DNA of 42,348 bases, from assembly GCA_004431415.1 (NCBI GenBank), contig QPMI01000361.1:1-42348 (forward strand), written 5' to 3'. Under the pieces are notes generated by a model. The model did not search any database, was not told the DNA's origin, and saw only the letters and a program-made list of their open reading frames with translations. Source of the DNA: Cyanophora paradoxa CCMP329. Taxonomy: Eukaryota; Plantae; Glaucophyta. Of this stretch, positions 411-19,559 are shown piece after piece. Each line of letters opens with the position of its first letter. Positions within the stretch are counted from its first letter, which is position 1. A program made the position numbers and the translations under genes.

Positions 411-1177
411 CTGCACGTGCAACGGGCTGTACCCCGGGACGCGTACGTATACGTATACGCTGGCGGCGCCGGCGCCGGCGGCAGCGCACGTGTGTCGCGA
501 TCGGCGGCGCGGGCGAGCTGCAGGCTTAAGCGCGCGGCCGGGCGCGCATTTCTTGCCATGGGCCATGGCCAACTGCAAGTTGATCATCGAATTTATCGAT
601 GATTTGGATCCTGCCAGGCTTTGGCAGGCTGCACTGCAAATTTAACGCCGCGCGTGCGCGCCCGCGCGCGGCCGGCTGCCAGGCTGGCCGCGCCGTCGGA
701 CCGTCGGACGCCGGCCGCGGCCGCGGCCGCCACGCATGCATCATGGCATGCGCACGGCCGCGTAGCTGGCGGGCCAGTGGCGGCGCATGTCGCATGCACA
801 GCGGCAGGCCTAAGCCGCCTAGGCGGCCGCGGCCTAGCTACCGTGGCGCCGCGGCTCAGCGCCGCGGCGCCGCGGCGGCGGCTGCAGCCTAGCGCTAGCG
901 CAAGCCCGGAATTTCGAATTTCGAAGCTGATCATCATATGATCCTAGCAAATGCCGTGATCATGATCTCGCTGACGTACACGTCGACGCGTACGCGCGGC
1001 GCGATCCGCGCGCGCGCCGGCGGATCATCGGATCGTCCTGGCGCAGGCCGCGCAGTGCGCGAGCTCCGGCCGGGACCGAATCTCCTCAATGCAAAATCGA
1101 AAAGAAGCGTGTGGGGGTACGCGGTCGTTTCTCGGCTAGCACAACACACGACGCATATTGCGAGCAAGGGAGCCACG

Positions 1178-4100
1178 ATGCGCGTCGCGGCGATGCCGCC
1201 CGCGTCGCGGACCGCCTTGGACGACGTAGGGAAGATGCTGAAGGTTCGCCACGAGCACCCGCGCTCGCTTGGTCCCCTCCGACTCGCCCGCAGTCGTTGG
1301 TCTCGCAAACAACGGAACCATCGGCCTCGGACTTCAGTTTCTTCTCGTACGCCGAGATTTGGAGGCCTTCAGTGGCCACCCAGGTGCGCTGAGAGCAGCC
1401 GCGTCATCCGAGCTGTCACCGACTCGCGACCGCTCGGGGGCCCACCAGATCGGCGCGGACATGGCGCGCACGTACGAGTATTTGACTTTGGAGCCGGAGC
1501 ACAGCGTTAGACAGCCTTTGGATGAGGCGAGGGTCGCTCGATACCGAGTAGCCGCGCAGCCCGTACGCCTGAGCAAAGGTGTGCATCTCGTCCCCCATTC
1601 GCCCATATATAGCTCGTGATAGTTCTCCTTTGCAGGCGAGGGCATCGCCGGGCGCGCGTGGTTGTTCGAGGAGTACGAGTGTACGCTCTGCCGCGTCCGC
1701 GCGTCCAGAATCTGTCTCCTCTTCCGCTGACGGAGGAGTACGAACCAGGGCTGGTGGATTGCGCGACAATGCCAGGCGTCTGCTGTCCGCTCAACGACGT
1801 GGCGGATCTGGCCGGCTTTCGCTCCGCAGTGCGTCCACATGTGCTCGGGAGCACGCTCGCGTCCGCCCACTCCCCGGCAGCTGGCGGTGCCGTGCTTCAA
1901 CGCGGGAGGGTCTTTGATGGCGGTTTTCGTTCTGTACGCGGCGTTTCCGAGCGAAGAGCCCGCCGGCGTTGTCCGCGCAGGTGTCCGATGCGGACGCCCG
2001 CGCGCCAACCCGGGAGCCGCCTCTGACGCCTCCCGCTCATGATGCGCAGTGATCTCGGAGGCGTCGCGGCGATTGGGGAAGGGCTCCATATACATCGGGA
2101 GGCGGAAGCCGCCGCCAGTCTCCGAGCTCACGAGCCCCGCCGTCCTCCAGTATTTGAAGTCCTCGTGCGCTCCCGCGCGCCCCGCGGGCGGCGGTTCCGC
2201 GCAATCTGACATCGCGCCGGCGCCGGGCAGGCCGAACTCGCGTACCCTGGACCAGGTCCGGGGCTTCCTGCAGGCGTGCCCGGCGCTGCCGCTGCTGCGC
2301 AAGTTCGCGGTGGCCGCCGAGGCGCTCGCCGCGTCGGCCGTGCTCGTCGAAGCGTCCCCCGGCACCGTCGGCGCGCCTCGCCCGGCCCGCGTTCCGCGCC
2401 GGGCCGCGCTCACGCCCGCCCCGCAGTGTACGCGGCCGGCGAGGTCGGGAGGGGTACCGCGTACGTCGTCCTGGACGGGCGCGTCGTGATCAACGAGCAG
2501 CCGTCGGGCGCCGGTTCGATCCTGCTCGGGCCCAGTTCCTCGTTCGGGGAATCGGCCCTCTTCTGCCCCTTCCTGCCCCGGATCAGCTCAGCCACCGCGG
2601 GGGAGGCCACGCGACTGAGTCCGCCCCTTTCACCCGCCGTCCCCCCGCACGCCGGCCCGCTCACCGGCGCCCGCGCCCGCGCGCAGTGTGCATCGAGCTC
2701 CACGGAACCGTCCGCGCTCACCTGATGTCCCTGGCCCCCCCCGCCCTTCCCGCGCGGGACGCGTCGGCCGTCCGGCCGGCCGCCGGCGGCCCCTTGCGAG
2801 GTCCGTGTACCCTTCTCCAGCGCGCAATCGCCGCGCCGGGCGCCCGTCCGAGCGGCGCGGCGCGGCGGGCGCAGGCCTGATGGCGGCGCACGTGGCCGGC
2901 TCCTCCTCCGACCTGCTCTCGGCCCTCTCCCTCACCGCGCCGCCCTCGCCGCCCTCCCCCAGCTCCCCCGTGCCCCGCTCCCCGCTCTCAGGCGGCGGCT
3001 CCGACGGCTGGGTGCCCGAGCCGGGCTCCCTCTCCGCGCCCCCGAGGCCCCGGACCGTGAAGGAAGATGAGGAGGCGGTGGAGGAGGAGGAGGAGGAGCA
3101 GGAGCAGGGGAACGGGCAGGCGAACGCGGCCGCGCAGGGCGAGGGCCAAGGCCAGGCGCAGCAGGCGCCGCAGCGCGTCTCGAAGGAGATCAAGATCGAG
3201 TACGACATACTCAAGCGCTGCTTCGCGATGCCGCTGCAGCAGGCGGCAAGGCACCTGGGCGCGTTCCGCGTACCCTCCCTTTCCGGCCCCGCTCAGCTGA
3301 TCGGACCCCTCCGCCTTCGGCGCGCGCAGGCGTGTGCGCAACGACGCTGAAGAGGATATGCAGGACGTACAACATCCCGAGGTGGCCCGGGCGCACGGTG
3401 CGGCGGGCCGGGGGTCCGGGACCCGCCCGGACTCGAACCCGGATTCTGCGCAGGTTCGCAGGGACGAGAAGGCTGCTGCGCGGCGCGGGAGGCACTCCCG
3501 CGAGCGCGAGCGGTCCGCGCAGGGCCAGTCCGACTCGGGGTGCGAGCGCCCCCCGGGCCTCCGGCCCGCCGGGCCGTTCGCGTACCCCCGCTGACGTCCC
3601 TTTCTTCCTCCCAGCGACGGCGCGCGGTCGCCCCGCTCGCTCTCCCCCGGCGTCTCCCCCCCGGGGGGGCAGGGGTACCCCGACGACGACTCGGCTGTCC
3701 CGTCTTCGGCGCGGCCCTCGCCGCACGTCGGACCCCGGGCCCCGTCGTCCGCTGGGGCGGTCCCGGGCTCGAATCTGAAGCGCTCCTCGTCCTTCCAGGG
3801 CCCCGGGGCGCCTCCGGAGCTCGCCCTCGGGCCACCCGGCCCGCCCCGCGTCGTGCGGCGGCCCCCGCCGCTCTCGCCCTCGGCCCTCTCCGCCCCCGCG
3901 CCCCCCGGCCCCAAGTCGGCCTCCTCCTCCACCTCCTCCACCTCCGCCTGCGTCCCGTCCTTCTTCGCCGGCTCGTCCCCGCCGTCGGCGCCGCCGCTCC
4001 GGCGCGCCGCCTCGGCGCAGGCCCTCTCCCGCATCCGGGACACGGTGCTCGCGGAGCTGGGCGCCGCCGCCGGCCCCGCCTCCTCGCCGGCCCCGGCGCC

Positions 4101-4514
4101 CTCTGCCGGCCCCGCCGGCCCTGCTGCCTCCTCCCGCCCCGCCAAGCGCTGCTCCTCCGCCGCATCGCTTCAGAACGCCGCCGGCTCCCCCGCGCCGGCC
4201 GCCGCCGCCGCCGCGCTGCACCCCGCCGGCGGCGGTCGCGGGATCGGATCCCGGCGGAGGACCTTCCACTCGCTGGAGAAGCTCAACGCCGGCGAGTCGC
4301 TCGTGCTCTCCTCGTGCAGCGACGCCGCATCGGTCCCGGGCTCCCGCAGCCGCACGCAGACGCCTCTCTCGGGGTACAACGACTCGGCCGGCGGCTCCTT
4401 CCGGAACGGCAGCGCCGTCGCAGGGACCGCCTCCGCCTCCTCATCCGCCGAGGATGCCCCTCTGAGCAAGCTGCGGCGCACGACCGTCACGCCGCCGGCG
4501 CCGGCGCCGGCCGC

Positions 4515-4580
<66 letters not shown>

Positions 4581-6153
4581 GGCGGCAGCCGAGCCGGCGG
4601 CCGTCGCTGCCGCCGCCGTGAGCTCTCTCCAGCTGGGACCCTGGGGCCTTGGCTCGGTCAGCGAGGACGGCCCGGCACCCCAGGCGAGTCCCCTCTTCCC
4701 TTTCCCTTGCTCCGCGCCGCCCTCCTGACCTCCGGACAGGCGTGGGAGCTGGGCCCCGCCGACGCCGCCGCGTGGGCGCCCGGGAGCCTGGACGTCAACG
4801 CTCTGTCGGCCCGCGACCTCTGGTCCATGATGCAGGCCCGCCGTCGCCCCCGCCCCGCTTCATCTGGCCGCCTCCTCTTCTGCCTCTGCCTCTGAACCTC
4901 GCCGGCGCAGCTGGACCCCGTCGACGAGGCCTCCCTCCTGGCTCTGGACCAGCTCGCGGCGCTCGCGGCGCCGCCCGCGCCGCCCCCCACCCCGGTGCGC
5001 CCTCCCGCCCCCGCCGTGCCCCCGCGCTCTTGACTCGCGCGCCTTCCCCGGCCGGCGCTGCAGGCCCCGCGCCCGCCGGCGGCGGCAGCGGTCAAGCTGG
5101 AGCCGCTGGAGCTCCCGGGGCCGGCCCTGGCCGCCTCCTCCTCCTCCGGCCTCGTTTCGTCGGTGCGGCCGCCGCCCCGCCCGCCGCCGCCGCCCGCCGC
5201 TGTCCGCCGCGGCTTTGCTCAGACGGTTCTCCCCCTCGCAGCTCGAGCTGCCGGGCCCTGGGGCGACGTTATGGGCGCATCCTCCTGCGTCGCCTGGCCC
5301 AGGTGCCGTACCCCCCCCCCCCCCCCCCCCCCCTTCTTCTCACCGCCGGGTCCCCCGCAGCCCCTCGGCAGACGCGACGGGCGTGGCCCGCCCCAAGCCG
5401 ATCGCCGTCCCGGCGCCCCCCGCGCACCCCATCGCCGCCTCCGCCGGCCACAGCCCGTCCTCGGGAGAACGTACCCTCCTCCAGATGGCCCTGGCGGGTA
5501 AGGAGATCACCGTCAAGGCCTCGCTCCGGTACCCCCTCCCCTTCCGCACCCGCCCCCCCGCACTCGTACCCCCCGAACGACCCGCCCGCGCAGGCGCCCC
5601 GACGGCGCTCTCCACTTCGTTCGCGTTCGAGTCTCGGGCGGCACGAAGGTCCAGGTCCGGCCTACCTACCCCGCCCCCGCATCCAAGCGCACCCTTTCAA
5701 ACCCGGGCCCCTCTGACCGGCTTCTTTCGACTTCTTTCGGCGGAGCAGGAGCTGCAGGCGGAGCTGGTGCGGGCGTTCGGGCCTGCGCTCGTGGCCCCCG
5801 GCTCGGGCCTGCGGCTGCGCCACTTTGGCGAGGCGCGGCCGCCCCCCGGGGACCTCGCGGACGATGCTTCCCGCGCCGGCGAACCCCTCGACTCGGACAC
5901 GTGCGCCCCGCTTCTCCGCTCCGCTTCTCTCCGCTCCGCTCCGCTTCCGCGGCTGAGGCGCGGCCCGCGCGCAGCCGGTGGTTCATCGCGGCGGCCAGCA
6001 CGCTCCTGCACGGCCGCGAGGTCCTCCACGTCCACGCCCAGGTTCGAATCCGCCCGGTTCCCCTTTCTTTCTTCCTCGGTCCCTTCCTTCCCCGGCCCGG
6101 CCCGCCCTGACGCGCGCCCTGCGCCGCCCGCTCAGCTCGCGCCGCGGAGCTGA
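1178..6153 (+). CDS. Multi-exon RWP-RK transcription factor, NLP/NIT2-like: GAF, cNMP-binding, RWP-RK, polyQ and C-terminal PB1-like domain
   Basis: Manual splicing from ATG 1178. GAF: YAEIWRP...KGEGIAGRAW...GFRSALAVPCFN..GSLMAVFVLY (~1300-1950). cNMP: AYVVLDGRVVI...FGESALFCPFLPRISSATA (~2430-2610). RWP-RK: IEYDILKRCFAMPLQQAARHLG|VCATTLKRICRTYNIPRWPGRT (3190-3400). Then Q21, and EITVKASLR...ELQAELVRAFG...LRLRHF (PB1-like, weaker). Stop TGA at 6151-6153. Confidence 0.85.
4516..4578 (+). repeat. (CAG)21 pure trinucleotide repeat encoding polyQ
   Basis: Counted directly; lies in frame within ORF 3853-4728 of the RWP-RK gene. Confidence 0.95.
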
Positions 6154-6358
6154 GGCGGGGTGCGATTTCGCTCGCGTTCCGCGATGGTATGCAATTATGA
6201 TCAACACGATTCTTGATTTCGCCGCTCGTTGTTCCCTTTGTAGTGGAGTGATTGCTTATTTGTTTCCTCGTCTGCTCACAATCCCCGCCTGCGGCGCCTG
6301 TACATACGTGCTAGAGCTATACATATCCATGCAGCGTGTTAGCGCTAGCGGACAGGCA

Positions 6359-6378
6359 TCTCTCTCTCTCTCTCTCTC
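6359..6378. repeat. (TC)10 microsatellite
   Basis: Seen directly downstream of the RWP-RK stop codon. Confidence 0.9.
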
Positions 6379-7488
6379 TTTCTCTTGTAGCCTCCTCCTT
6401 GTAAGATTTCCGTCGTGCCCTTGTGATTCTAGACAGATCTCAGATCCTTACCTGCCGGCTCTGTTAAGACGAGTGTACAATAAGACAGTTCGCTTCTATC
6501 CCCTTGTAGTCGTTCCTCGACCTTTGAGATTCGTCGAGATCTCTGCAGAAACAATTATTCCTTTATTACCAACATTTTATGTCAGACTCAGTTTGCACAT
6601 ATCCATCTTCTAGACAGCTGTAGGCAGTCATTTGCAATTGCAGGCCCGGGATGGCTTAGTGGGGCGCGCTTTGATGCCACAGGTTTCGGTTTCCATTTAA
6701 TTCTCAGCTGCAGCTTTCCATAGCTCGTATTCAAATTCGACTTCAGTCTTCAATTCCGCTCGTTTCAAAACATACGGCGCAGCTTCGAGCGACTGCTCAA
6801 CTTCACAGAAGAATTTCGGTACCGTAGTACATGCACTCTTGCGAGAACATTTATGCAGGCCTTTCTTCGATTCGCGTCCGGACGCTAGCTCGCGCTTTCC
6901 TCAGGTCGAGCCTCTCGATCGTAAATTCGCGCCGGTCGCTTCGAATTCCTAGCTGTAGAGTCACTGAGTTCGAATTCATAGCCTGTGTCCGGAGCCTGGT
7001 TTCCGCCCTGTAGAGATGTATGCGGCCAGAAATTGGCCTGGAATACAAGGCTATGCGTGCATGAACAACAGGCCCCCATGGCCAGCTGCAGCTGCAGCCT
7101 GGCAGCAGATACAGAAAACCGTTGGCCATATGCATGGATGGCTTGATCGATAGCCGCCGGCACCCATGACCATGGCGCGGCCCGCACTCACGCGTGCGGT
7201 CCGTCGACGTCACGGAACGGACTCCGGCGAGCTCGAGCTCGAGTCATCTGACTGTTCCCGCCGTGTCGCCGCCCGAATTCATCTGAAGGGGGTACCTAGT
7301 TTGCTGACGTAGGCCAGCAGCTTCTCGAAGTCTCTGACAGAGCAGACCCCGCAACGAAAGGTGAGCGTTCTCACGCTGAATTGGCCATTTCGAAGCACGC
7401 GGGCTCCGAACACAGCTGATTCTGCGCCCTCGCGCACCTTTCCCCAGACAATCCGCTCCGACCAGTGCAACTTGACAACTTCGCTCCC

Positions 7489-8738
7489 ATGGAGACCATC
7501 TCCAACTTCTTCACGGGCAACCGTGGGCCCCGCTTCTCCGCGGATGCCGTGTTCAGCACAAAGCCGCTCACCGAGCCCGTGCGGGCCCACCTTATGCGTG
7601 TCTACTCCACTCTCGCGGCGTGCCTCCTCTCTGCGGCCCTTGGCTCCATGTCCTTCGTGAAGGTTCGCGGGCCTCCGGCTTTTTTCTGACCCATCGACCG
7701 CCGTTCGAATCTGCCATGCCATCGCCACGATTAGGCTCGCTCTCGTGCTGCCATGGGCTTTACGGCAGCGGCTTCCGGAATCCGGCTTCCCCGCGTCCTT
7801 CGACCTTATCCGGTGTTCGGAACGTGATCCTTGACGCGCAGTTCGGCTTCGGCGGCGGCGCGGCAGCAGCTCTGGGGTCTCTATTCTCGATGCTCTATCT
7901 CGCATTCACGCCCTACATGCCCGGCAACGTCCAGCAGCAGCAGAAGCGCACTCTGGCGCTCATGGTGGTGCGTTCCTGGTTCCCCGCGTCGATCGCGGCC
8001 GGGCTTCTCCGCCTGGCCATCACACGACGCGTAGCTAACGCTGCTTCTCGCGGCCACGTTCGCAGATGGCGTTCTTCCACGGCAGCAACCTGGGCCCGCT
8101 CATCCTCATGAGCCTCTACGTCGACCCGATGATCATTGTGACCGCGCTCATCGCCACGACGGCGATCTTCGTCTGCTTCTCCGGCGCCGCGATCTACGCG
8201 AAGCGCCGGGAGTACCTGTACCTCGGCGGCGTCCTGAGCAGCGCGCTGATGGTCATGTGCATCACGAGCCTGCTGAACATGTTCTTCCGCATCCGCATCA
8301 TCTACGAGGTGCGGCGCGCGGGGGGCGCGCTGCTCGCCGCGCGCCCGGTGTCGAGCGCCCGCCTCGCAGATGGAGCTGTATGCGGGCCTCCTGATCTTCT
8401 GCGGGTACATCCTGTTCGACAGCCAGCTCATCATCGAGAAGGCGTTCGCCGGCAACCACGACGAGGTCAGCCGCGCCCCGCGCGCATCCGCCGCGTTCCG
8501 CGCCCCGCGCCCCGCGCCGACGCGCCGCGCGCCCCCGCAGGTGTCCCAGGCCCTCGAGCTCTTCCTTGACCTGGTCCAGATCTTCGTGCGCATCCTCATC
8601 ATCCTGCTCAAGAACAAGGAGAAGGTGGGCGCCGCCCGCGGCGGATTACTTTAACCCATCGTGCGCGGACCCTGACCCGCCCGCCCGCCCGCGCAGGAGC
8701 GCCAGGAAAAAAACCAGCGCGACTCTCGCCGCCGCTAA
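7489..8738 (+). CDS. BI-1: Bax inhibitor-1 (TMBIM6 family), multi-exon
   Basis: METISNFF...VRAHLMRVYSTLAACLLSAALGS; GSNLGPLI..DPMIIVTALIATTAIFVCFSGAAIYAKRREYLYLGGVLSS; ELYAGLLIFCGYILFDSQLIIEKA; ALELFLDLVQIFVRILIILLKNKEK|ERQEKNQRDSRRR*. All introns are GT-AG. Likely 5'UTR intron at 7361-7465. Confidence 0.95.
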
Positions 8739-9093
8739 GCGCGTAAGCGCGGCGCCGGCGAGAAGCCAGCATCCTGAACGCCTATGTGCATTCTTCTCCG
8801 TCGAGCATTCTGACACGTACTAGCGTGCATAGCGTAGCTCTTGTGGATACTTGTACTATGTAACCTGAATGGGAACACTGGGGTATTTCATGCAATCTCA
8901 ACCAATTCGTGCACTGCTTTCTCGCGCGCCCCTCCGAGGCTCGGCCCCGGGCCCCGGGGCTGCCCCGGCGCGCGGCGTCTCGGGAATGCAAATGAAATGC
9001 ATATGTATCGATCTGGATATTCTTACACCTTGATCGCGCCTATCGGCCTATGACGGCGACGTCGGACACGCGGGCGGCGGGCGGCGGGCTAGC

Positions 9094-12000
9094 CTAGCCG
9101 GCGGTCGCCTGGAGGGCCGGCTGCATGCCGAGCTGCGCCTGCATCGCCTCGATCCGTCGGAGGAGGTCCCGAGAGCGCGGCGTGAGGACCCTGCGCGCGC
9201 GGGGCGCCCGGCGGTCAGCGGGGGAAAGAAAGGCGAGGGGGGTACGAGGGTGGTGGCGCACAGCCCGGAGGACGAGTCGCCGGAGCCGTGCTGGCGGCGC
9301 TTGGGGGAAGGGGAGCGGGAGGAGGGAAGGGGCTGGGAAGGCGTCCCGCTGGGGGCCGGGAGGGCCGGCGGGGGCGGAGCGGCGGGGGCGGCGCCTTCGG
9401 GAGGGGGCGCCAGCCGGCGGCGGATGTCGTCGCTGCGCCGGAACGTGAGCGGGAGGGGCGCCGAGGACCGGCCGCGGGGAGTAAGCTCAAAGGGGGTACC
9501 GGAGGCGCTCGATCTCGGCCTCCACAGAGTCGCGGCGGGCGGAGGCGTCGCCGTCGGCGTCGCTGGAGCCGCTGGAGGCGGCGATGGGCGCGGGGGCGCT
9601 CAGGTCCGAGGCCGCCGCCACGCTCGAGAGGCCCGGCGACAGGGCGCCGAGGGGCGTCGGGCCCGCCCGCCCCGCCGACGCGCCCCGCAGCGCGCTCCGC
9701 ACCGCCGCGCCGCCCTCGCGCGCCGTCCGGCGGGCCCGCGGCGCGTGCGGCGAGCGCTGCGCGTGCGGCTCGGACGGGCCCGAGAGGGCGGCGGCGGCGA
9801 TGGGCGCCGCGGGGCCGGAGAAGGCCGTCGGGGGGCGCGAGAGGGCCTCGGAGGAGGCGTGGGAGGAGAGGAGGGCGCCCCCGCGGGCGCGCCCCCCGCC
9901 GCCCTCGCGGTCGCGATCACGATCACGATCGCGATCGAAGCCGGCGTCGCCGGGCCCGCCGGGGGACGAGATCGTCGTCCCCGTGGAGTGCCCGCCCCGG
10001 TCCCGGTCCCGGTCCGGGCCCGCGCTGAGCTCGACCAGGAACGACGAGCCGGAGGGCCCGCCCCCGACGGCCTCCAGCCCGGCGCCGGCGCCGGCCCCGG
10101 CGCCCTCGGAGCGCCTGCTCTCCTCCATCAGCTGCACCTGGTACTCCAGCTTCCTGTGGCGCGCAGTACCCGTCAGCGCCCCGCCGCTCGGCCCGGCCCC
10201 GTACCCCTCCCCGCTCGCCTCAGGGACGCATCCTTCTCGAGCGAGTCGTCCTCGAGCCGGTTGCGCTCCTCGCGCGCCCGCGCCAGCTCCTGCTGCGCGT
10301 CCACCAGCTGTACCCCCCACGCCGTCAGGAAAGAGCGCGTGCTTGTACCCCCGCGCCGCCGCCCGCCCGCGGCACCTGCTTCTGGAGCTCCCGGATGCGC
10401 AGGTCCCGAAGCTCGATCGTCTGCACCAGCGTCGCGTTCGCGACCGTCACCTGTGGGGAGGGGAGGGGTACAGGGTCAGCTCCGTGTGAAGAGGGGTACG
10501 GCGCTGTGCGGGGAGGGGGTACGCGGCGCGCCTTCCGCTGCAGGTCGATGAGGGCGGCCTCCTGCTCCGCCTTCTCGCGCGTCAGGCGGCCCTCCGCCGC
10601 GTCCTGTGGGGTACCCGTGCTCAGGAGACGAAGGGGGGTACGCGATCCGATCCGATCCGGTCGGAGAATGGGGGTACCTTGACGTCGAGGAGGCGGCGGA
10701 GCTCGCCGGCGATCTCGAAGCTCTGTGCCAGCTTCTCCTGCCGCTCCTGCAGGCGAGCGGGTGAGCGGGCAGGCGGTCGAAGAAAACGAGAGCGCTCTCT
10801 TCTCTTCCGGCGCACCTGCAGGGCGCGCTCGAGGCGCTCGCGCTCGTCCTTGGCCCGCCGCTCCGACCGCTCCAGCTCCGCCTGCTTCTCTGCGGGGCGG
10901 GGGGCAAGGAAGCTCAGCCGCCCCGCCCCGTTTTTCGTAGGGCCGGGCGGGCGGACCCTCGAGGACGGCGCGGAGCTGGTAGAGCGCCTGCTCGGCGCTC
11001 TGCCGCTCCAGCAAGCTGTGCACCGCCTGCGCCCGCCCGCGCGTGAGGCGCGCCCCGCGGCCCGCACGAGCCCCGAATCGGAAGTTAATGGCTATAAGTC
11101 GCATAGTGTTAACGTTGTGCGTGGCAGACTGCCCAAAGACAGCGACCGCCGCACCTGCGACGTCGCCTCGTCCTGGCGCGCCGAGGTGGCCTCCGAGAGG
11201 CGCGCCACCTGCCCCGGCCCGGCGTTAGAGGAGGATGGGGGGGGGGAGAGGAGAGGGGGGGGTACGCGCCTCGGACTGGAGCTCGCGCTCGCGGGCCTCG
11301 CGGCGCTCGAGCTCGCCCCGCAGCGCGTGCTCGACCATCGCCGACTCCTCCAGCGACTTCCCGAGGCCCTCCTGCGCGGCGCGGGCGGGCGCGTGAGGCG
11401 TGAGGCGTGCGCGGAGAGGAGTGTGGCGCGGGAGGGAGGGAGGGGGCCGCACGATCTGGCGCCGGGCCTCGGAGTGGGCCTGCTGGGCCCGCGCCAGGTC
11501 CGCGTTGAGCGCGTGCACCCGCTCGAAGAGCCGGACCTGAGATAGGCGTCAAGAAAGGACCGCCGAGACGAAACAAAGCAAAAACAAAGACGCGCCTGCT
11601 CCAGGTCGCTGTTGACGAGGCGCGCCTCGAGCGCATCCGCGCGCGCCCGCTGGTCCTCCCCTTCCCGAACCGCCTGAGGGATGAAAGGGGGGCGGATGAG
11701 CGAAAGGGACGGAAGGGATGGAAGGGCACGCTCGCCTGCTCGCGCTGCTCGCGGGAGCGCTGGCGGAGGGCGTCCCGCCACTCGCCGAGCGCCGCCCGCC
11801 GCGACTCGCACGCGCGCCGCGCGCAGAGGCTCGCCACGACCCGCTCGGCGGCGCGCCGGGAGCGGCTCCAGTGGAGCCACGCGCGGAAGGCCGACGCGGC
11901 GCGCCGCCTCTCGAAGACGCGGCTGAGCGCGGCCGCCCGCAGCCCGCTGTGCGCGTACTCTGCGGCCGCCGGGGGGAGCTCGTGAGCCGGGCCGGCCTCT

Positions 12001-15000
12001 CGCAGAGGCGGCGGGCGCACGCTTGGCGAAGATGACGAAGGCCTGCCAGCGGGCCCAGGCGGCCCGCTGGACCTCGCCCTCCGACTCGCGCCCCGCCCGG
12101 ATCGCCCGGTGCTGCGCTCGCTCGGGTGAGCCCGGGCCTCTCTTCTTCTTCTTCTGGGGAGGGGCGGGGAGGTGGCGGGGACGGGCGCGCCTCCACCGCG
12201 ACGAACTTGCGCCAGGCGTAGAGGGACCGCACGAGCAGGCGGCGCCCGTGGCGGCCCTCGGCGGCCGAGCGCGCCTCGTGCAGCCGCTGCTTGCGCGCGT
12301 GGAAGCGCCGCCACGCCGCGAAGCCGCGCCGCAGCCGCGAGCGGTCGCACGCCGCCTCCGCGGCCTCCAGCATGCGCTGGCGGCGGCGGGGCGCGCCGGC
12401 CGCGTACAGGCGCCACGCCGCCCACGCCCGCAGCTTGGAGTGGTAGCCGGCGAAGTCGTCCGCGACGCGCCGGAGCGCCGCGTAGGCGTGCCAGGCGCGG
12501 AAGGCCTCGGCGGCGACCTCGGCCAGCCTGCGGCGCGCGGCCAGACGCCCGCGCACGCCGAGGCGCATGGCGCCGGCCCAGCGCCGGAAGCAGCGCGCGA
12601 GCAGGTGCTCGCGCCCCTCGGCGGCCGCCGCGCGTTTGATCCGCCGCCGCTCCCGCTGCAGCGCGGCGCCGTCCCGCAGGCGGCGGAGGAAGCGGCGCGC
12701 CGTCGTCTGCGCCCAGAACGACTCGGCGATCTCCTCCGCGCGCGTCCGCTCGTCCATGATCCTGCGCCCGCGCCGGCCCCGGCCCCGCTCGGCGGCCCGC
12801 GCTCGACGGGGCCAGGGCCCGGGTGCGGACGGGGGACCTCACCTGAGCTCCATGTGCAGGTGCTCGGCCTTGCGCCGCGCGTACTCTGATTCGTTCGCGA
12901 CGCGCGCCGCCTCCGCCTTCGCCTCCTGCGGGGACGTCAGCGGCTGCGGCGGCGGCGGCGGCGGCCGGCGCGGCGCTTTTTAAGGAGGGCGGAGCGCACG
13001 TTGAGGGCGTCGAGGAGGCGCTGGCGCTCGCGGGCGGACTCGTCGAGCTGCGCGGCCATCGCCTCGCGCTGCTCCTGGAGCGCCCGCGCCGCCGCCACCT
13101 CCGCCATCAGCGCGTCCAGCTCCGCCTCGAAGCTCTGCACGTTCTCCTCGTTCTGCCGGCCCCGCGTCGGCCGCGCCCCAGGCGGACGGATGGAGGGAGG
13201 GAGGGAGGGAAGGGACGAGGGCCCGCCGCCGGCCCCGCGCCGCCCCGCGCCGCCCCGCGCCGCACCTGGCGCTTGTACTCCTTGAGCTTCTCCTGGAGCT
13301 GGCCGTTCATCTCGAGGAGGCGGGCCGCGGCCTCCTCGCGGTCGGCCGCCTCGCCACGGAGCCGCTCGATCTGCTCCCGCAGCGCCTCCACCTCCTCCTC
13401 GACGCGCAGGCGGGCCTTCATGTACGCCGTACCCATCTTCACGCCGTCCACCCCGGAGCCCGCCACGCGGGGCGCCTTCGGCAGCACGCGGGCCGCCGCG
13501 CCGCCGCCGCCGCCGCCTCCGCCTCCGCCGCCTCCGCCTCCGCTGCTGGGGCCTGAGGGCCGCGAGAATGGAAGCCGATGGGGACGGCCACGCGTGGGGC
13601 TGCCCGGCGGGGCCGACGCGGCGGCGGTCGACTGCTTGCCGGGGGAGGGGTGGCCCACGGAGGGCGCCCGCGCTGGCGGCTCTGCGGGGCGCGAACTCAG
13701 AAAATCAGACCCCGCTTTCGCGGCGGGGCCGTCCGGGCGCACCGGGGTACTCGTCGTCCTCGGGGCCGCTGGGGCGTCGTGGCGGGCGGTGGGAACGGGC
13801 GCGGGGCCGGCGGGGCCCTCGTCCTCGCCCGCCCCCGCCGCCGAGGGGCCGGCGGCGCCCGACGGGCCAGCCATCGAGGTGTCCGCCGACGAGGTCCCAC
13901 GCGAGGCGGGCGGCGAGGGCCGCGGGATCCGGCTCGGGCCCGCCCCGCCCCGCTCCCGCCCCGCCCCCGCGGCCGGGGAGGGGCCCCGGCCAGGCGGCTG
14001 CGGCGCGCCGGGCGAGGCGTGCCGGCGGCCGCCGGGCCCGCCCGAGGAACCCGGCGGCGGCGGCGGCGGCGGCCTGGGCCCGAACCAGGCCGCCTCCTCG
14101 CCCGGCTGCTCCGAGAGCAGCAGCAGCTGCTTCTGCGGCGGCGCTCAGGAGCAGCAGGAGGCGGCGAGGGGAGCGCCTGCGGCCGGCGCGCCTGGAGCAC
14201 GGCGATCTTGCGCTGGTACTCGATCGCCTGCGCGTCGTAGTCCCCGCGGAAGTCTTCCAGAAGCTGCGGGCGGGGCGGGTTGGCCAGAGCCGGGGGGCGC
14301 GGGGCGCGGGGCGCGGCCTGCGCCCGGTGGGCGCTTGCCTGGCCGATGGTGGTGCGGAACTCCTGGATGACAGCCTCTCGTTCCATCCGCCGGTTCGCCT
14401 GCGTGCGGGCCTGCGGAGGACGGCCGCTCAGGCGGCGCGGGAGCGGCGCGGGCGCGGCGGGGCGCACGTCCGCCTCGCGCAGCTCGTGGATGCGGGCGCG
14501 GGGGTTGTAGAGGGCCAGCTTCTGCTGCACGCGGCCGGCCTCCTGTACCTGCGCGCGGCTCAGCGGGGCGCCGGGCAGGCGTCCCCCGATCCATCGGCCG
14601 CTCGCCTGCTCCTCGAGGGCGCTGAGGCGCTTGGAGACAGCGTTCTGCACGCCCAGCATGACCTCGGCGTACGCTTCGTCCCACGCCTCCGGAGAGTTCT
14701 TTGGCTTGACTTTCGAGACCTGCAGCGCCTGACGCGGGCGTGGGCGGGCGATCCTGTGCGCGCGCCGCGCGGCGCGGCGAGGCCGGCGGCGGCGCACCGG
14801 GTCGGCGTCGAGCTGCTTCGAGAGCGTGCGGTACTGCTGCAGGTTGTAAGCCCGCCGCGCCTCCGTGCGCATGAAGTTGTGGATCCGCTCCCGCTCGCTA
14901 TGTGAGGGCTCTGGGTCAAGGAGCGCGCAGCGCGGTAGGAAGAAATTCCGGGCCGGGAAAAGGAAGGCGCGGGGCAAAGGATATCATCGACGTATCGCTC

Positions 15001-16136
15001 GTAGTCGCAGACGTGCAGGAAGAGGTTCACGTTGAACGGCACGTACGCCGGCGGGTCCAGCCGGCTCAGGACGCCGAGCTTTCCGTTGACCGCCACCCGC
15101 AGCTCGCTGTGCATCTTCACGCGGGCGACGGCCTGCAACGCGCGCGGGCGGAGCGGTCCCGGGTCAGCTGCGGCGCGCTGGCAGGAGGGCGGCGCATGTC
15201 GCGAACCCATTCGATCTTGCGGCGCATGCACTCGTTGCTGACAAGCATCGAAAGCATAGTCTCTTCCTTCTTCACGATCACGTCGGCCTGCTTCCTTTCC
15301 GCGGGCGTGATCTCCTGCATTCGAGCGCCGCGTCAGCGCCAAGGTCCGAGGGCGCGAGCGGGCGCAGGCGCGGAGCTCGCCTTGCTGTCCAGAATGGAAA
15401 GCTGAGGCAAGATGCTTATGACGCGGGCCCTGTAGTACGGGATTTGGCACACGGGGTTGGCGTCCAGGTTCAGATTGTGCAGCCGGGTCGCAGCTTTGAG
15501 CGCGTTGAGCTGGGCAACATCGGAGATCTGCCGCGGATACGATTCAACCATCGGAAGCATCTCCAGCCAACGCCGACGGGCGCCACGCACGCAGTTGTTC
15601 GCCAGGGAGACGGTCCGAACGCTGCGGAACTGCTGGATGCCACGCAGGCTCACGAGGCTGTTGTTGCTCAGGTACAAGGTCTCCGCTGATTGGTACTTTT
15701 CCGGCAGCGTGTCGATCTGCCCGGCGTCAGCTCGGCTCAGTCCTCGCGGCGGCCAGCCACGGACCTCGGTGATGTACTTCTCGACGCAGCTGATCTTGTT
15801 GGGGTCGAAGGACCCTGGCTGCTGCCTGAACACCTGGCTGAGCTGTTCGAGGGCTCGGGGATCAGCCTGCGCGGAGGTGCTGGCGGCTCGCTCAAACCTT
15901 GAACGGCTCAGTCCTGCGCTTCACAGCTGCGGGGCGTGGGCCATCCGACTTCGACGAGGGAGAGCGCGGAGAGACGCTCCTACGCCCTGCGGTGCCAGGC
16001 GACGAGGAGCGCTCCTGCGGGTGGTGTTAGCTGCGAGGTGCCGAGCGGCTCGGGGCTCGGCTGTGCGATGTACCGACTTGCGCCTCTGCAAGGAGACGTA
16101 GGAGGCGGCCGCGCCGCCGTCCCTCGTCGCCTTCAT
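9094..16136 (-). CDS. Large multi-exon protein with N-terminal LRR plus LRRcap, coiled coils and Sfi1-like repeats (putative basal-body/centriole protein)
   Basis: LYLSNNSLVSL..IQQFRSVRTVSLANNC|I...LHNLNLDANPVCQIPYYRARVISILPQLSILD (15380-15720). Long E/R/Q/A-rich coiled-coil exons. Repeats such as HLLARCFRRW, AFRAWHAY, RGFAAWRRF, RSLYAWRKF (11730-12760). Last exon ends ...QPALQATAG* at 9094. Start codon tentative. Confidence 0.75.
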
Positions 16137-16294
16137 CGAACTCGCGCAGCCAGCTCAAAATTTCGAGGGGTACAGGTCGCTCAAACCGGCATCGTCGGGC
16201 AACTTCCTGCGGGACTCCAGCAGCTCTCCGTACATTCGGCAGAGCGCAGAAGAAGCACCTGGTGTCAACGACGAGCGCGTCGGGAGGCGAGGCG

Positions 16295-18688
16295 ATGGAG
16301 GCACCGAACGCTGCAGGTGCGCCGTTGCAAACGCTGCTGCAGCTGCGACAGTTGCCTAGAGTAACGGAATCGGCCGCAGCCGGCGGGAGCAGCGCGGTCG
16401 GGAAGAGCAGAGATTCTGGCGGTTTGAGTGTGGGCGGGTCAGAGGGAGCTGCCGCCGTCGGCCGCAAGCGAAAGGGCGGCAGGATCGCCCGGCCAGACAG
16501 GACTCCCGAGAGCACCGGTGGCGGATCGTCCAGCAATGAGTCCGGCAGCGGGCACTCCGCTTTAGAGGCGGACGCCGTCTCGCCAGCTGCCTGCAGGCCT
16601 GTGCTCTTCGGTGCGACCGCTCTGCGCCCCTCGAAGCGATGCCGTGTGCCCCTGACAGCGCCCGATGCGCCCCAGAGGACAATCTCATGACGCGAAGCGC
16701 TCGCACGGCGAGGCAAGCGGCCGTCGAACACGCCGCTGCACCCGTCCCGTATCCGCCGCGGGAAGCGAAGGGCTGGGACCGGAAGGTTCGGATCGGCGGC
16801 CCGGGCCCCATCCCTTCCAGCCTGCCATCCGGCGTGGCCACGGCGCTCCGGCGGGCAGAGATGGCTCTGGAGGCGGCAGGGGCGGTCCTGCTGTCGTCGG
16901 AGTCGGAAGCAGACGGCATGTGGACGCAGCGCACCGGGCGGGAGGGCAGCCCCGCGGGACAGCTGCCGCCGCTCCGCCCCGTCGACGCCAGCAGCCCCTC
17001 GGCCTCTGCCTCGGCCTCGGCCCCGACGGACTCGCTCGCGTCGCAGAGCCCGAACAGACCGTCCTCCATTCCGCGGCTTGGCCTCCCCGCCTCCCCGTCG
17101 CGGCCGTCCCCCGCGCACCCGCCCGCTGCGCGCGCGCCGTCCCGAACCTCGGCAGCCGCCGCGCCGGCGACCCCGCCGACGTCCTCGACCGACGACGAAG
17201 ACCCGCTGCCAGCGCCGGCGGCGGCGGGGGGGGCGCCCGCGACGCCGGAGAGCGCGCGGCAGCTGAAGGGCTCGCCCCTTCTCGAGACGCCCGACCTCCC
17301 GAAGCGCAAGTTCAACACCGTCGCGTCCCGGCCCTCGCGCGAGATCCCCCGCATTCCGCTCTCGTTCAACTCAACCCCGGCGGCCGCGGCGCCGGCCCCC
17401 GGCGCGGCCGGCACGGTGGCGGCGCCGCCGCAGCCCCCGCGGGACAAGGCGGGGCGGAGCAACAGCAAGAAGCTGCCCGAGGACGAGCCGGGGACGCTGG
17501 CGGCGATCGCAGACAAGGAGGCGGAGATCGTGACGATGCGGGGGCGCCTCGGGCGGTTCCAGACCGAGCTGGCGCACCGGGAGCAGAGCATGTCAGTGCC
17601 TTTCTTTCTTTCCTCCCTCTCTTCTTTCCTTCCTTCCTCCTTTCTTTTTGACGACGGTCCGCGCGCCCCGCAGGTACGAGCAGCGCGCCATGGAGCGCGA
17701 GCTCGGCATCGAGGACGACGACGAGGACGAGGCGAGCACGCGGTCCCTGCCGGCCGAGGCGGCCGCGGCCGCGGCCGGAGGAGGCTCGACGGCCTCGCCG
17801 GCGCCTGTCGGGCCCGTCCCGCGGAGGGGCGCCGCGAGGCGGGAGTTTTGGCGGAGGTCCGAGGAGGAGCTGCGCCGCTTCCGGTGCGCTCGCCGCGCCC
17901 GCCCGCCCCGCCCCGCCCCGCCCCGCTCCGGCTAAGTGCGAGCGGCGGGCAGGCGCGTCATCTCGGAGGAGCAGACGCAGATCGAGCAGCGGGAGAAGGA
18001 CCTCCTCCTGCTGCGGGCGCACCTGCGGCGCCTGCAGTCGGGCGGGCAGCCGCGCAGCCGGCGGCGCGCCCCGCCGGAGCTCGTCGCGCGCGCCGGCGAC
18101 ACGGCCGCCGGCGGCGGCGGCGGCGCCTCGTCGTCGGCCCTCTCGCCCGAGGAGCGGGAGCGTGCCGCCCTGGAGGAGGACGTCGTCCGCCGGGCGAAGG
18201 CGGCCATGCAGCCGGGCCGGACCGCCGACGCCGCCGGGGGCGGCCCCGGCTTCCCCGGAGGAGGAGGAATCGACCCCGCCGCCTTCCTCCCGACCATGCG
18301 GTCCGTCCGCCCCTGCCCCCTCCCCCGCCCCCTCCTCTCTTCGGTCCGCGGCTGACTGGGCAGAGGGGGGAACAGGAACATCGCGGAGTCCGAGGAGCGG
18401 GTGGGGACGCTGGCGTGGCTCGCGCGGCAGGCGCGGGAGCAGCAGGGGCGCCGCCCCAGCGACGACTGGCGCGGGGGCGGCCCCGGCGGCGCGCGCCGCC
18501 CCGGCGGCCTCCTCGCGTGGTTTTTCGGCTGCTTCCGCTGCTTCAACGCGGCGCCCAGCTACGCGAGCGGCTCCCCGGAGGGCATGGGCCTCCCGCCCCC
18601 GGCCTCCCCGACCCGCCTCGCCCTCGCCGGCTCGGGCGCCAGCTCGCCCGAGCCCCAGCCCCAGCCCCAGCCCCAGCCCCAGCCCTAG
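16295..18688 (+). CDS. Uncharacterised multi-exon protein with low-complexity N-terminus, coiled coil and C-terminal (PQ)n tail
   Basis: ATG 16295; intron 16610-16674 joins VLF to EDNLMTRS. Coiled segments IADKEAEIVTMRGRLGRFQTELAHREQ and EEQTQIEQREKDLLLLRAHLRRL. C-terminus LLAWFFGCFRCF...PEPQPQPQPQPQP*. Confidence 0.7.
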
Positions 18689-19559
18689 GGCTGCTCCCGC
18701 CCGCCCGCCCTTGTCCTCTCTCTTCTCCCGGCCCTGGCTCGATGCTTTCCTTTTCTTGTGTGTTCTTTCCCTTTTTTCCGGACTTTTCTGGGTGTGGTGC
18801 TTATCTCTATCCATCCTTGAGGGTCTTCTCTTTTAGCTGTGGCAGTTTATGAAGGCTCCGAATTCGATTCAACAGTTTTGTCTAGGTCTGGGCGGGCCCT
18901 GTATCTGAGCTGCCCCCGGGATCTTTCGATTGTGCTTTTTTCTCTGTGTCCGAGCTTGTGAAATCGATTTCCGCACGCGAGATTCGTGGCCACGGCTCAG
19001 CGAGGTCCAAGAGCTCGAGGAAGCGGCTGCCCTCTCCAGGTTGCCGGGCTTCGAATTCGAAGCGCCCCAACACGTTCTCCATGGCCCGAAAACCGGACGT
19101 CGACGCAAACCAAGAAGAATTCGACCGTTAACGACAGAATGGTGATGAAAAGCGACTAGGAATGCCATTTGAATGACTCAGTGGCTAGAGGCCTCATGAT
19201 CAGAGCTCGAGTCACGCCCAGCAAGCTCGCTCGATCGCGATCTCGAGCTCGCGGCCGGCAACGTTAACGTTCGAATTCGCGCAACGAATTCGAAGTCAAT
19301 TGAAACATTCGCTCGATCCTGGCAGCAAAGAATTCGAAGCCAATTAATTTGTTTGTATTGAATTACCCGGGACCGGCCACAGTCTCTAGACACCACTGTC
19401 ACACCAGCACTCATGATCAGTGACTGCGGCGGCTGCTCAGCTGCAGGGGGCACAGGGATAGCAGAAGCACAATAACTAGGACAAGAGCACGCATCGAAGA
19501 ACAACATGTACACGAAGAACTTGAAGAGCCAATTGCAAAACCGACAAATAAAGAATCTA

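What the first reader, a model, noticed from the sequence alone, without database searches (positions are those of the whole stretch)
1178..6153. NLP-like transcription factor with a cyclic-nucleotide-binding domain between GAF and RWP-RK
Seen: one spliced gene encodes GAF, cNMP-binding, RWP-RK, Q21 and a PB1-like C-terminus. The cNMP phosphate-binding cassette (FGESAL...PR.SSATA) keeps the Glu and Arg. Known: land-plant NLPs are GAF-region/RWP-RK/PB1 nitrate regulators, and Chlamydomonas NIT2 is GAF/polyQ/RWP-RK without PB1. I know of no RWP-RK protein with a cNMP domain. Inference: a eukaryotic one-component regulator, CRP-like in logic, integrating a GAF ligand with cAMP/cGMP, and relevant to the origin of NLPs.
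Basis: partly seen in the sequence, partly recalled or inferred. Interest (0 to 1): 0.8.

Follow-up and report, generated by a model that had tools for sequence, protein, structure and literature searches.

The report
RWP-RK regulator carrying a cyclic-nucleotide-binding domain
A single, expressed 23-exon gene of a very GC-rich eukaryote (probably a green alga) encodes a nitrate-regulator-type (RWP-RK) transcription factor. Just before its DNA-binding domain sits an intact-looking cAMP/cGMP-binding domain, a combination I could not find described and which suggests direct cyclic-nucleotide control of gene expression.

Summary
The core observation holds. Spliced RNA contigs from three studies, laid on 601-6500, give a 23-exon gene, 1178-6153 (+), of about 1161 aa. 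All 22 introns are 50-94 nt, GT/GC..AG and phase-consistent. One RNA contig carries the N-terminal exons, the three cNMP-domain exons and the RWP-RK exons together.

The cNMP domain has three independent supports on its core exon alone:
- Pfam PF00027, E 1.1e-4.
- PDB matches to a Euglena PKA regulatory subunit and M. tuberculosis CRP, with the phosphate-binding cassette aligned.
- 29 of 30 ESM-Atlas feature hits are cNMP_binding.

FGE...PR.SSATA keeps Glu and Arg, at E. coli-CRP spacing as I recall it.

RWP-RK is split by an intron, 15.2 + 39.3 bits (motif RWPGRT). Q21 is exact.

The GAF-like and PB1-like parts gave no profile or PDB hit exon by exon; they rest on by-eye likeness only. The PB1-like frame is kept only because transcripts carry one more C at 5256-5258 than the window.

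No relatives were found, but the collections lack this organism, so that says little. No paper joins RWP-RK with a cNMP domain.

Verdict: real; a new variant of a known kind (NLP/NIT2-like factor plus a CNB sensor). Ligand binding and function are untested. The joined protein was never searched or folded.

The parts
1178..6153 (+). Whole coding region, 23 exons: 1178-1243, 1294-1383, 1449-1578, 1636-1680, 1749-1828, 1881-1980, 2050-2164, 2231-2370, 2427-2618, 2687-2800, 2875-3258, 3330-3397, 3454-3539, 3615-4683, 4740-4835, 4911-4994, 5064-5162, 5242-5302, 5361-5528, 5594-5654, 5749-5900, 5975-6041, 6136-6153 (stop 6151-6153). About 1161 aa with the transcripts' extra C.
   Evidence: Spliced RNA contigs. 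Splice-site and phase checks. GC3 0.905. Fourteen joints are listed directly. The joints 2800/2875, 3258/3330, 3397/3454, 3539/3615 and 5302/5361 follow exactly from contig-coordinate arithmetic. The three 5' exons are inferred from splice sites, an open frame and the contig length upstream of 1634.
1294..2164 (+). N-terminal region (about aa 23-208) that looks like the NLP/NIT2 N-terminal 'GAF-like' region: AEIWRPS, YRVAAQPVRLS, GEGIAGRAW, LAVPCFNAGGSLMAVFVLY.
   Evidence: By-eye likeness to land-plant NLP motifs recalled from memory. No Pfam or PDB hit exon by exon. Untested as a domain.
2231..2800 (+). Cyclic-nucleotide-binding (CNB) domain on three exons (2231-2370, 2427-2618, 2687-2800), about aa 215-340.
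   Evidence: PF00027 E 1.1e-4 on the middle exon. PDB matches to PKA-R and CRP. Atlas 29/30. The first exon aligns colinearly to a two-CNB protein (P0005 151-182) just before the middle exon's match (194-229).
2543..2599 (+). Phosphate-binding cassette FGESALFCPFLPRISSATA, with Glu at 2549-2551 and Arg at 2579-2581.
   Evidence: Read directly from the sequence. Aligned to [24 protein letters not shown] of M. tuberculosis CRP. Invariant F, G, E, A, L, P, R with both CNB domains of P0005. Unique in the window, 0 in 200 shuffles.
3061..3110 (+). Acidic run (EDEEAVEEEEEEQEQ) between the CNB domain and RWP-RK.
   Evidence: Translation. AGG/GAG tandem repeat.
3195..3397 (+). RWP-RK DNA-binding domain, split by the GC-AG intron 3259-3329. 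The motif reads RWPGRT (3380-3397).
   Evidence: PF02042: profile 2-22, 15.2 bits, and profile 24-44, 39.3 bits, E 6.2e-10.
3615..4683 (+). Large exon encoding a 356-aa Ala/Ser/Pro/Gly-rich, probably disordered region.
   Evidence: Composition A67 S61 P53 G35 Q28 of 356. Covered by RNA contigs 3614-4482 and 4620-4680.
4516..4578 (+). Q21 tract: 21 perfect CAG codons.
5256..5258 (+). C-run where the RNA contigs of three studies have four C and the window has three. The extra C keeps the reading frame.
   Evidence: table 5c (15 letters CTCGAGCTGCCGGGC between 5162 and 5256). Phase arithmetic.
5500..6150 (+). PB1-like C-terminus on five exons: KEITVKASL / RPDGALHFVRVRVSGGTKVQ / ELQAELVRAF...LRLRHFGEA...LDSD / RWFIAAASTLLHGREVLHVHAQ / LAPRS.
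   Evidence: By-eye likeness only: a Lys in I-T-V-K-A-S, an acidic D-S-D-x-R-W stretch, and a final hydrophobic strand. No Pfam or PDB hit exon by exon.

Best explanation
Shown: 1178-6153 (+) is one transcribed, 23-exon gene for a protein of about 1161 aa. Its domain order is: NLP/NIT2-like N-terminus, cyclic-nucleotide-binding (CNB) domain, acidic linker, RWP-RK DNA-binding domain, long disordered Ala/Ser/Pro region with Q21, and a PB1-like tail. The CNB domain keeps the cassette residues that hold the ribose 2'-OH (Glu) and the cyclic phosphate (Arg), and the Gly-rich turn before them. Inferred: the protein is a transcription factor whose activity is set directly by cAMP or cGMP binding to the CNB domain, through DNA binding, oligomerisation or nuclear retention. 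In logic this is a eukaryotic counterpart of bacterial CRP, with the sensor N-terminal to the DNA-binding domain in one chain. RWP-RK factors of the NLP/NIT2 type control nitrate assimilation, and in Chlamydomonas cGMP represses those genes through an unknown effector. The most likely role is therefore cyclic-nucleotide input into nitrogen-responsive transcription. Nucleotide specificity cannot be read from the sequence: the residue after the Arg is Ile, neither the Thr of cGMP-selective nor the Ala of PKA-type cassettes (types recalled from memory).
For: The gene model and a single transcript contig spanning the CNB and RWP-RK exons come from two studies, with a third study showing the same joints. 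Phases and splice sites are consistent. The coding signature is GC3 0.905. CNB evidence: PF00027 E 1.1e-4 on one exon; PDB PKA-R E 8.5e-5 and CRP E 3.4e-4 with the cassette aligned; Atlas 29/30 cNMP_binding; colinear match of the preceding exon; cassette unique in the window versus shuffles. RWP-RK: 39.3 bits, above the cut-off, plus a colinear first half. [quoted passage not shown] First-reader notes say this genome has several class III cyclases and a cyclase-PDE fusion; I did not check them.
Against: No ligand-binding or DNA-binding data exist. The Pfam score of the CNB exon alone (22.5 bits) is under the gathering score (27.5), and the joined domain was not scored. The cassette has one extra residue compared with most CNB domains and Ile after the Arg. 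The RWP-RK motif is RWPGRT, not RWPxRK. No orthologue was found in any other organism, so conservation of the fusion is unknown. GAF-like and PB1-like identities are unverified. No nitrogen-assimilation gene was recognised next to it. RWP-RK factors in algae also govern mating rather than nitrogen use.
Confidence: 0.6

Rival explanations
1. Same gene and architecture, but the CNB-like domain no longer binds a cyclic nucleotide. It would serve as a dimerisation or regulatory module, like the CNB-homology domains of KCNH/KAT channels. Or it would bind another small molecule, as some CRP/FNR-family sensors do (2-oxoglutarate in NtcA, haem in CooA).
For: The score is below the Pfam gathering threshold for the exon. 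There is a one-residue insertion in the cassette relative to M. tuberculosis CRP, and Ile follows the Arg. A 2-oxoglutarate sensor would also make sense for a nitrogen regulator (my own knowledge of NtcA).
Against: Ligand-free CNB-homology domains and NtcA lack the FGE...PR pair. Here Gly-Glu and Pro-Arg, the two contacts that define cNMP binding, are both kept, and the best solved relatives are true cAMP binders (PKA-R, CRP).
Confidence: 0.22
2. A cyclic-nucleotide-gated RWP-RK factor that controls sexual or gametic differentiation rather than nitrate assimilation. This would follow the MID/VSR1/RKD branch of the family, with cAMP as the mating signal.
For: RWP-RK factors MID and VSR1 control gametic differentiation in volvocine algae (PMC10629530, listed). 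cAMP signals mating in Chlamydomonas (my own knowledge). No nitrogen gene was found beside the locus.
Against: The size, the N-terminal NLP-like motifs, the Gln tract and the PB1-like tail look like NLP/NIT2 rather than the short MID/RKD type. That likeness is by eye only.
Confidence: 0.2
3. Two neighbouring genes (a GAF-cNMP protein and an RWP-RK protein) joined by a chimeric transcript assembly or read-through.
For: Contigs, not single reads, were laid, and the tool warns that a contig across two genes shows no single transcript.
Against: There is no stop codon, no intergenic gap and no extra start. The exons follow each other at 50-94-nt introns with matching phases all the way. The same contig structure appears in two studies, and its joints in a third.
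Confidence: 0.03
4. The gene is decaying in the sequenced strain: the missing C at 5256-5258 is real and the PB1-like tail is lost by frameshift.
For: Read literally, the window shifts frame after 5258 and reads a different, Arg/Pro-rich tail past 6153.
Against: RNA contigs of three studies are otherwise letter-identical to the window and carry the extra C (tables 3, 5c, 8). An assembly slip in a GC-rich run next to a 23-nt poly-C tract is more likely. The DNA run X12 does not cover the place.
Confidence: 0.07

Closest known systems
Land-plant NIN-like proteins (e.g. Arabidopsis NLP7)
   Same: RWP-RK DNA-binding domain in the middle of a protein of about 1000 aa. NLP-like N-terminal motifs and a PB1-like C-terminus (both by eye only). 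NLPs are defined as GAF + RWP-RK + PB1 (PMC9310391). An NLP with PB1 is reported in a few green algae such as Micromonas pusilla (PMC8200828).
   Different: A CNB domain sits between the N-terminal region and RWP-RK. The motif is RWPGRT instead of RWPxRK. There is a very long disordered region with Q21. The PB1-like tail has a long insertion in the acidic (OPCA) part and gives no Pfam hit.
Chlamydomonas NIT2
   Same: An algal regulator with GAF, a Gln-rich tract and RWP-RK, essential for nitrate-assimilation genes (PMC4620153).
   Different: NIT2 is described without a CNB domain. cGMP was only guessed to act through its GAF domain (PMC4620153). Here a canonical cNMP-binding module is present.
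Bacterial CRP/FNR family (E. coli CRP, M. tuberculosis Rv3676)
   Same: A CNB sensor N-terminal to a DNA-binding domain in one chain. The cassette aligns residue by residue with M. tuberculosis CRP. The Glu-to-Arg spacing equals that of E. coli CRP (from memory).
   Different: The DNA-binding domain is RWP-RK, not a winged helix-turn-helix. The protein is five times longer and eukaryotic, and the domain is encoded on three spliced exons. It works like CRP in logic but is not a member of that family.
Eukaryotic CNB effectors (PKA regulatory subunit, PKG, Epac, CNG/HCN channels)
   Same: The same sensor domain. The best solved match is the Euglena PKA regulatory subunit (6rsx).
   Different: Those act through kinases, exchange factors or channels. 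None carries a DNA-binding domain.

Membership tests
Cyclic-nucleotide-binding domain (Pfam PF00027, CAP/CNB fold) | Profile match to the beta-barrel | tested here: met
   Exon 2429-2617 alone: E 1.1e-4, 22.5 bits, profile 12-73/89. The score is below the gathering score of 27.5, but only two thirds of the profile lie in this exon. PDB PKA-R E 8.5e-5 and CRP E 3.4e-4. Atlas 29/30.
Cyclic-nucleotide-binding domain (Pfam PF00027, CAP/CNB fold) | Phosphate-binding cassette with Gly-Glu and (Pro-)Arg | tested here: met
   FGESALFCPFLPRISSATA at 2543-2599. F, G, E, A, L, P and R are invariant against both CNB domains of P0005 and aligned to M. tuberculosis CRP.
Cyclic-nucleotide-binding domain (Pfam PF00027, CAP/CNB fold) | Complete domain (N-terminal helix and strand 1 before, strand 8 and hinge helices after) | tested here: inconclusive
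   The preceding exon aligns colinearly to P0005 151-182 (E 0.064). The following exon gave no alignment. The joined domain was not scored. A fold of the core exon alone was too poor to use (pLDDT 48.8).
Cyclic-nucleotide-binding domain (Pfam PF00027, CAP/CNB fold) | Binds cAMP or cGMP | not testable with these tools
   Needs a binding assay.
RWP-RK domain (Pfam PF02042) | Profile match above the curated cut-off | tested here: met
   Second half 39.3 bits (cut-off 29.3), E 6.2e-10. First half 15.2 bits on the preceding exon, colinear (profile 2-22, then 24-44).
RWP-RK domain (Pfam PF02042) | [quoted passage not shown] | tested here: inconclusive
   The sequence reads R-W-P-G-R-T (3380-3397): five of six positions, with the final Lys replaced by Thr.
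NIN-like proteins (NLP) | N-terminal GAF(-like) domain | tested here: inconclusive
   No Pfam or PDB hit on any N-terminal exon. The exons are 14-43 aa and could not be joined. There is only by-eye likeness of four motifs to NLPs recalled from memory.
NIN-like proteins (NLP) | C-terminal PB1 domain with conserved Lys and acidic OPCA motif (K867, D909/D911/E913 in AtNLP7; PMC8200828) | tested here: inconclusive
   No PB1 hit exon by exon. By eye there is a Lys in ITVKAS and an acidic LDSDTRW stretch, with an insertion of about 20 residues before it.
NIN-like proteins (NLP) | Central RWP-RK domain | tested here: met
CRP/FNR transcription factors | C-terminal winged helix-turn-helix DNA-binding domain | tested here: not met
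   The only DNA-binding domain found is RWP-RK. The likeness to CRP is therefore in logic, not membership.

The most novel reading that the evidence does not exclude
This is the first eukaryotic transcription factor gated directly by a cyclic nucleotide. An NLP/NIT2-type RWP-RK factor reads cGMP or cAMP through its own CNB domain. That would supply the missing effector between the NO/ammonium-cyclase-cGMP cascade and nitrate-assimilation genes in green algae.
Probability: 0.3. Interest if true: 0.85.

Novelty: new variant of a known kind. Interest (0 to 1): 0.65.

Why it matters
In eukaryotes, cyclic nucleotides are known to reach genes only indirectly, through kinases, exchange factors or channels. 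The direct 'sensor fused to DNA-binding domain' solution is regarded as bacterial (CRP). A CNB domain inside an RWP-RK factor would be a eukaryotic one-component version of that solution.

It also bears on an open point in algal nitrogen signalling. cGMP made by NO-activated cyclases represses nitrate-assimilation genes in Chlamydomonas. How it does so is stated to be unknown, and the NIT2 GAF domain has been offered only as a guess (PMC4620153; PMC5912763).

This gene makes the question testable: a defined domain, two defined cassette residues to mutate, and a defined DNA-binding domain. The weight is limited because the fusion is so far seen in one organism and no function is shown.

Tried and rejected
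1. Exhaustive HMMER search of 1.84 billion representatives with the CNB core exon. It gave five weak hits. Four are repeat proteins without a CNB domain and one is a bacterial-type two-CNB protein (P0005). There was no self hit and no orthologue.

2. Word-index protein searches with the 356-aa exon and with the stop-free stretch holding the second RWP-RK half. Both were blank. Full-length relatives (about 1000 aa) are out of reach of the length filter for any single exon.

3. Two metagenome scans, with the CNB exon and the RWP-RK first half. There was no relative. Since not even the window's own protein is in these collections, the blanks say little about how rare the fusion is.

4. ESM Atlas with the RWP-RK exon gave no usable hit.

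5. Pfam and PDB searches on every GAF-like and PB1-like exon, and on the first and third CNB exons, gave nothing. The exons are too short.

6. AlphaFold2 of the 63-aa CNB core exon with a three-row alignment gave pLDDT 48.8, so it was not used.

7. Pfam on ten long stop-free stretches elsewhere in the window, to look for nitrogen-assimilation neighbours, gave no hit.

8. The NIT2 paper PMC2174885 is not held.

9. All searches were exon by exon, by reference.


Full report
WHAT IS THERE

The window is very GC-rich: 65-79% in 1-kb bins around the gene. Long stop-free stretches therefore occur in all six frames, and ORF lists alone say nothing here.

I searched for sequencing runs that hold 1178-6153. 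I then laid the contigs of four of them on 601-6500.
- X1, X4 and X14 come from three studies. Their contigs skip short GT..AG or GC..AG segments, so they are assembled RNA.
- X12 carries unspliced contigs (for example 853-2311), so it is DNA.

GENE MODEL

I shifted each reported joint to its canonical splice site and tracked codon phase exon by exon. This gives 23 exons from the ATG at 1178 to the stop at 6151-6153.
- The 22 introns are 50-94 nt.
- Four of them are GC-AG (donors at 2371, 3259, 4684, 4836).
- No stop codon occurs in frame.
- The protein is about 1161 aa.

Fourteen joints are listed directly. Five more follow exactly from the contig coordinates in table 8: 2800/2875, 3258/3330, 3397/3454, 3539/3615 and 5302/5361. 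For example, 154 contig letters lie between the pieces ending at 3257 and starting at 3614. That equals 1 + 68 + 86 minus the one ambiguous G.

The first three exons are the least certain part. They are inferred from splice sites, an open frame and the 319 contig letters upstream of 1634. That arithmetic puts the contig start near 1143, so 1178 is its first ATG.

Base composition by codon position supports the frames. GC1 is 0.72, GC2 0.61 and GC3 0.905 overall. The three cNMP exons have GC3 of 0.96, 0.90 and 0.89.

ONE TRANSCRIPT OR TWO?

X1 record 1 (2570 nt) and X4 record 17 (2561 nt) each run from about 1143 to beyond 4482. Each therefore joins the N-terminal exons, the three cNMP exons and the RWP-RK exons.

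A second contig (X1 record 2, X4 record 18, X14 record 15) runs from inside the CAG repeat to beyond 6500. The break falls in the perfect (CAG)21 tract (4516-4578), which short-read assemblers cannot cross. The genomic frame is open from 3615 to 4683.

A ONE-BASE DISCREPANCY

Between 5162 and 5256 the RNA contigs of all three studies carry the 15 letters CTCGAGCTGCCGGGC (table 5c). The window has CTCGAGCTGCCGGG followed by CCC (5242-5258). The transcripts therefore have four C where the window has three.
- With four C, exon 5242-5302 hands two bases to exon 5361-5528, and the frame runs into KEITVKASL and on to the stop at 6153.
- With three C, the frame shifts into an Arg/Pro-rich reading that passes 6153.

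The contigs otherwise show no differing letter (table 3). The place lies in GC-rich sequence 53 nt before a 23-nt poly-C tract. A slip in the assembly is therefore the likelier cause. The DNA run does not cover the place.

THE cNMP-BINDING DOMAIN

The middle exon (2429-2617, 63 aa) gave these results on its own:
- Pfam cNMP_binding at E 1.1e-4, 22.5 bits, profile positions 12-73 of 89. One search gave E 2.3e-4 on the wider stop-free stretch.
- PDB: the Euglena PKA regulatory subunit 6rsx at E 8.5e-5. Four entries of M. tuberculosis CRP at E 3.4e-4 to 4.1e-4. Further CRP/FNR proteins follow, then PKG and yeast PKA-R at the weak end.
- ESM-Atlas feature search: 29 of 30 hits are cNMP_binding clusters, with a top score of 0.96.

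In the CRP alignment, our LGPSSSFGESALFCPFLPRISSATA pairs with [24 protein letters not shown]. The Gly-Glu and Pro-Arg pairs are in place, with one extra residue between them. As I recall, that gives the Glu-to-Arg spacing of E. coli CRP.

A strict cassette pattern is found once in the six-frame translation of the 42-kb window and never in 200 block shuffles.

The preceding exon aligns to a two-CNB protein (P0005, Pfam E 4.3e-40). Its match at residues 151-182 lies immediately before the middle exon's match at 194-229. The order is therefore right for a full domain.

The following exon gave nothing on its own.

The exon-only Pfam score lies below the gathering threshold. The joined domain was not scored. 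That is the main technical gap.

OTHER DOMAINS

RWP-RK is clear. The first half is on exon 2875-3258 (profile 2-22, 15.2 bits). The second half is on exon 3330-3397 (profile 24-44, 39.3 bits, E 6.2e-10). [quoted passage not shown]

An acidic run precedes the domain. A basic stretch follows it, and then a 356-aa Ala/Ser/Pro/Gly-rich exon with Q21.

For the 'GAF' N-terminus and the 'PB1-like' tail I obtained no hit in Pfam or the PDB from any exon.

By eye, against NLP sequences I recall, some motifs resemble the NLP N-terminal region:
- AEIWRPS
- YRVAAQPVRLS
- GEGIAGRAW
- LAVPCFNAGGSLMAVFVLY

Others resemble a PB1 with its Lys and an interrupted acidic motif:
- ITVKAS
- ALHFVRVRVSGG..ELQAELVRAF
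- LRLRHF
- LDSDTRWFIAA
- VLHVHA

These are leads, not tests.

RELATIVES AND LITERATURE

No relative was retrieved.
- The exhaustive representative search gave only five weak hits and no self hit.
- Two word-index searches were blank.
- Two metagenome scans were blank.

Even the window's own protein is absent from these collections. The length filter also excludes 1000-aa proteins for any single exon. Absence here is therefore weak evidence of rarity.

In the paper library no article links RWP-RK with a cyclic-nucleotide-binding domain in one protein.

Relevant background from papers:
- NLPs are defined as GAF + RWP-RK + PB1 (PMC9310391).
- NLP genes with PB1 survive in a few green algae such as Micromonas pusilla (PMC8200828).
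- The NO-CYG56-cGMP cascade represses NIA1 and AMT1.1 (PMC5912763).

First-reader notes on other windows of this genome mention several class III cyclases and a cyclase-phosphodiesterase fusion. I did not check them.

SURROUNDINGS

Downstream on the same strand lies a Bax-inhibitor-1 gene (a piece at 8039-8566 gives PF01027, E 4.2e-14). No nitrogen-assimilation gene was recognised in the window. The domain is encoded on three spliced exons with the local composition, so it is not a recent intronless bacterial insert.

HOW IT MOST LIKELY WORKS

Shown: there is one polypeptide with a CNB domain whose contact residues are intact, placed about 120 residues before an RWP-RK DNA-binding domain.

Inferred: cAMP or cGMP binding changes DNA binding, oligomerisation (perhaps with the PB1-like tail) or nuclear residence. 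This would give CRP-like one-component control of transcription, most likely of nitrogen-responsive genes (confidence 0.6).

Rivals:
- A CNB-like module that binds another ligand or none (0.22).
- The same switch used for the sexual programme that other algal RWP-RK factors control (0.2).
- A decaying tail (0.07).
- A chimeric contig (0.03).

VERDICT

It is unverified for GAF and PB1.

The gene is a new variant of a known kind, an NLP/NIT2-like RWP-RK factor with an added CNB sensor. It works like CRP but is not a member of that family.

Interest is 0.65. A specialist in algal nitrogen or cyclic-nucleotide signalling would find it surprising, and it makes an open question testable. It is known so far from one organism and without functional data.

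Noticed in passing
window 5256-5258: RNA contigs of three studies have CCCC where the window has CCC. As written, the window frameshifts the last 155 codons of the gene. This is probably an assembly slip.
   Followed up: partly
window 5311-5333: A perfect 23-nt poly-C tract lies inside intron 5303-5360. DNA-run contigs (X12) thin out around it.
   Followed up: no
window 2371, 3259, 4684, 4836: Four of the 22 introns use GC-AG rather than GT-AG. All introns are only 50-94 nt. This is an unusually high GC-AG share.
   Followed up: partly
window 3380-3397: The RWP-RK signature reads RWPGRT: the final Lys of the family motif is Thr.
   Followed up: no
window 7465-8566 (+): The downstream neighbour is a spliced Bax-inhibitor-1 (TMBIM) gene (PF01027 E 4.2e-14 on the piece 8039-8566).
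   Followed up: partly
window 6154-6500 and beyond: The RNA contig that ends the gene runs at least 559 nt past 6500, to about 7060 if unspliced. That suggests a 3' UTR of roughly 900 nt in lower-GC DNA (53% in 6001-7000).
   Followed up: no
window 9000-19000: Long stop-free stretches of 500-770 aa in several overlapping frames on both strands gave no Pfam hit (three + strand stretches at 9034-10548, 12847-14367 and 16540-18849 were scanned). In this GC range ORF length is no evidence of a gene.
   Followed up: partly
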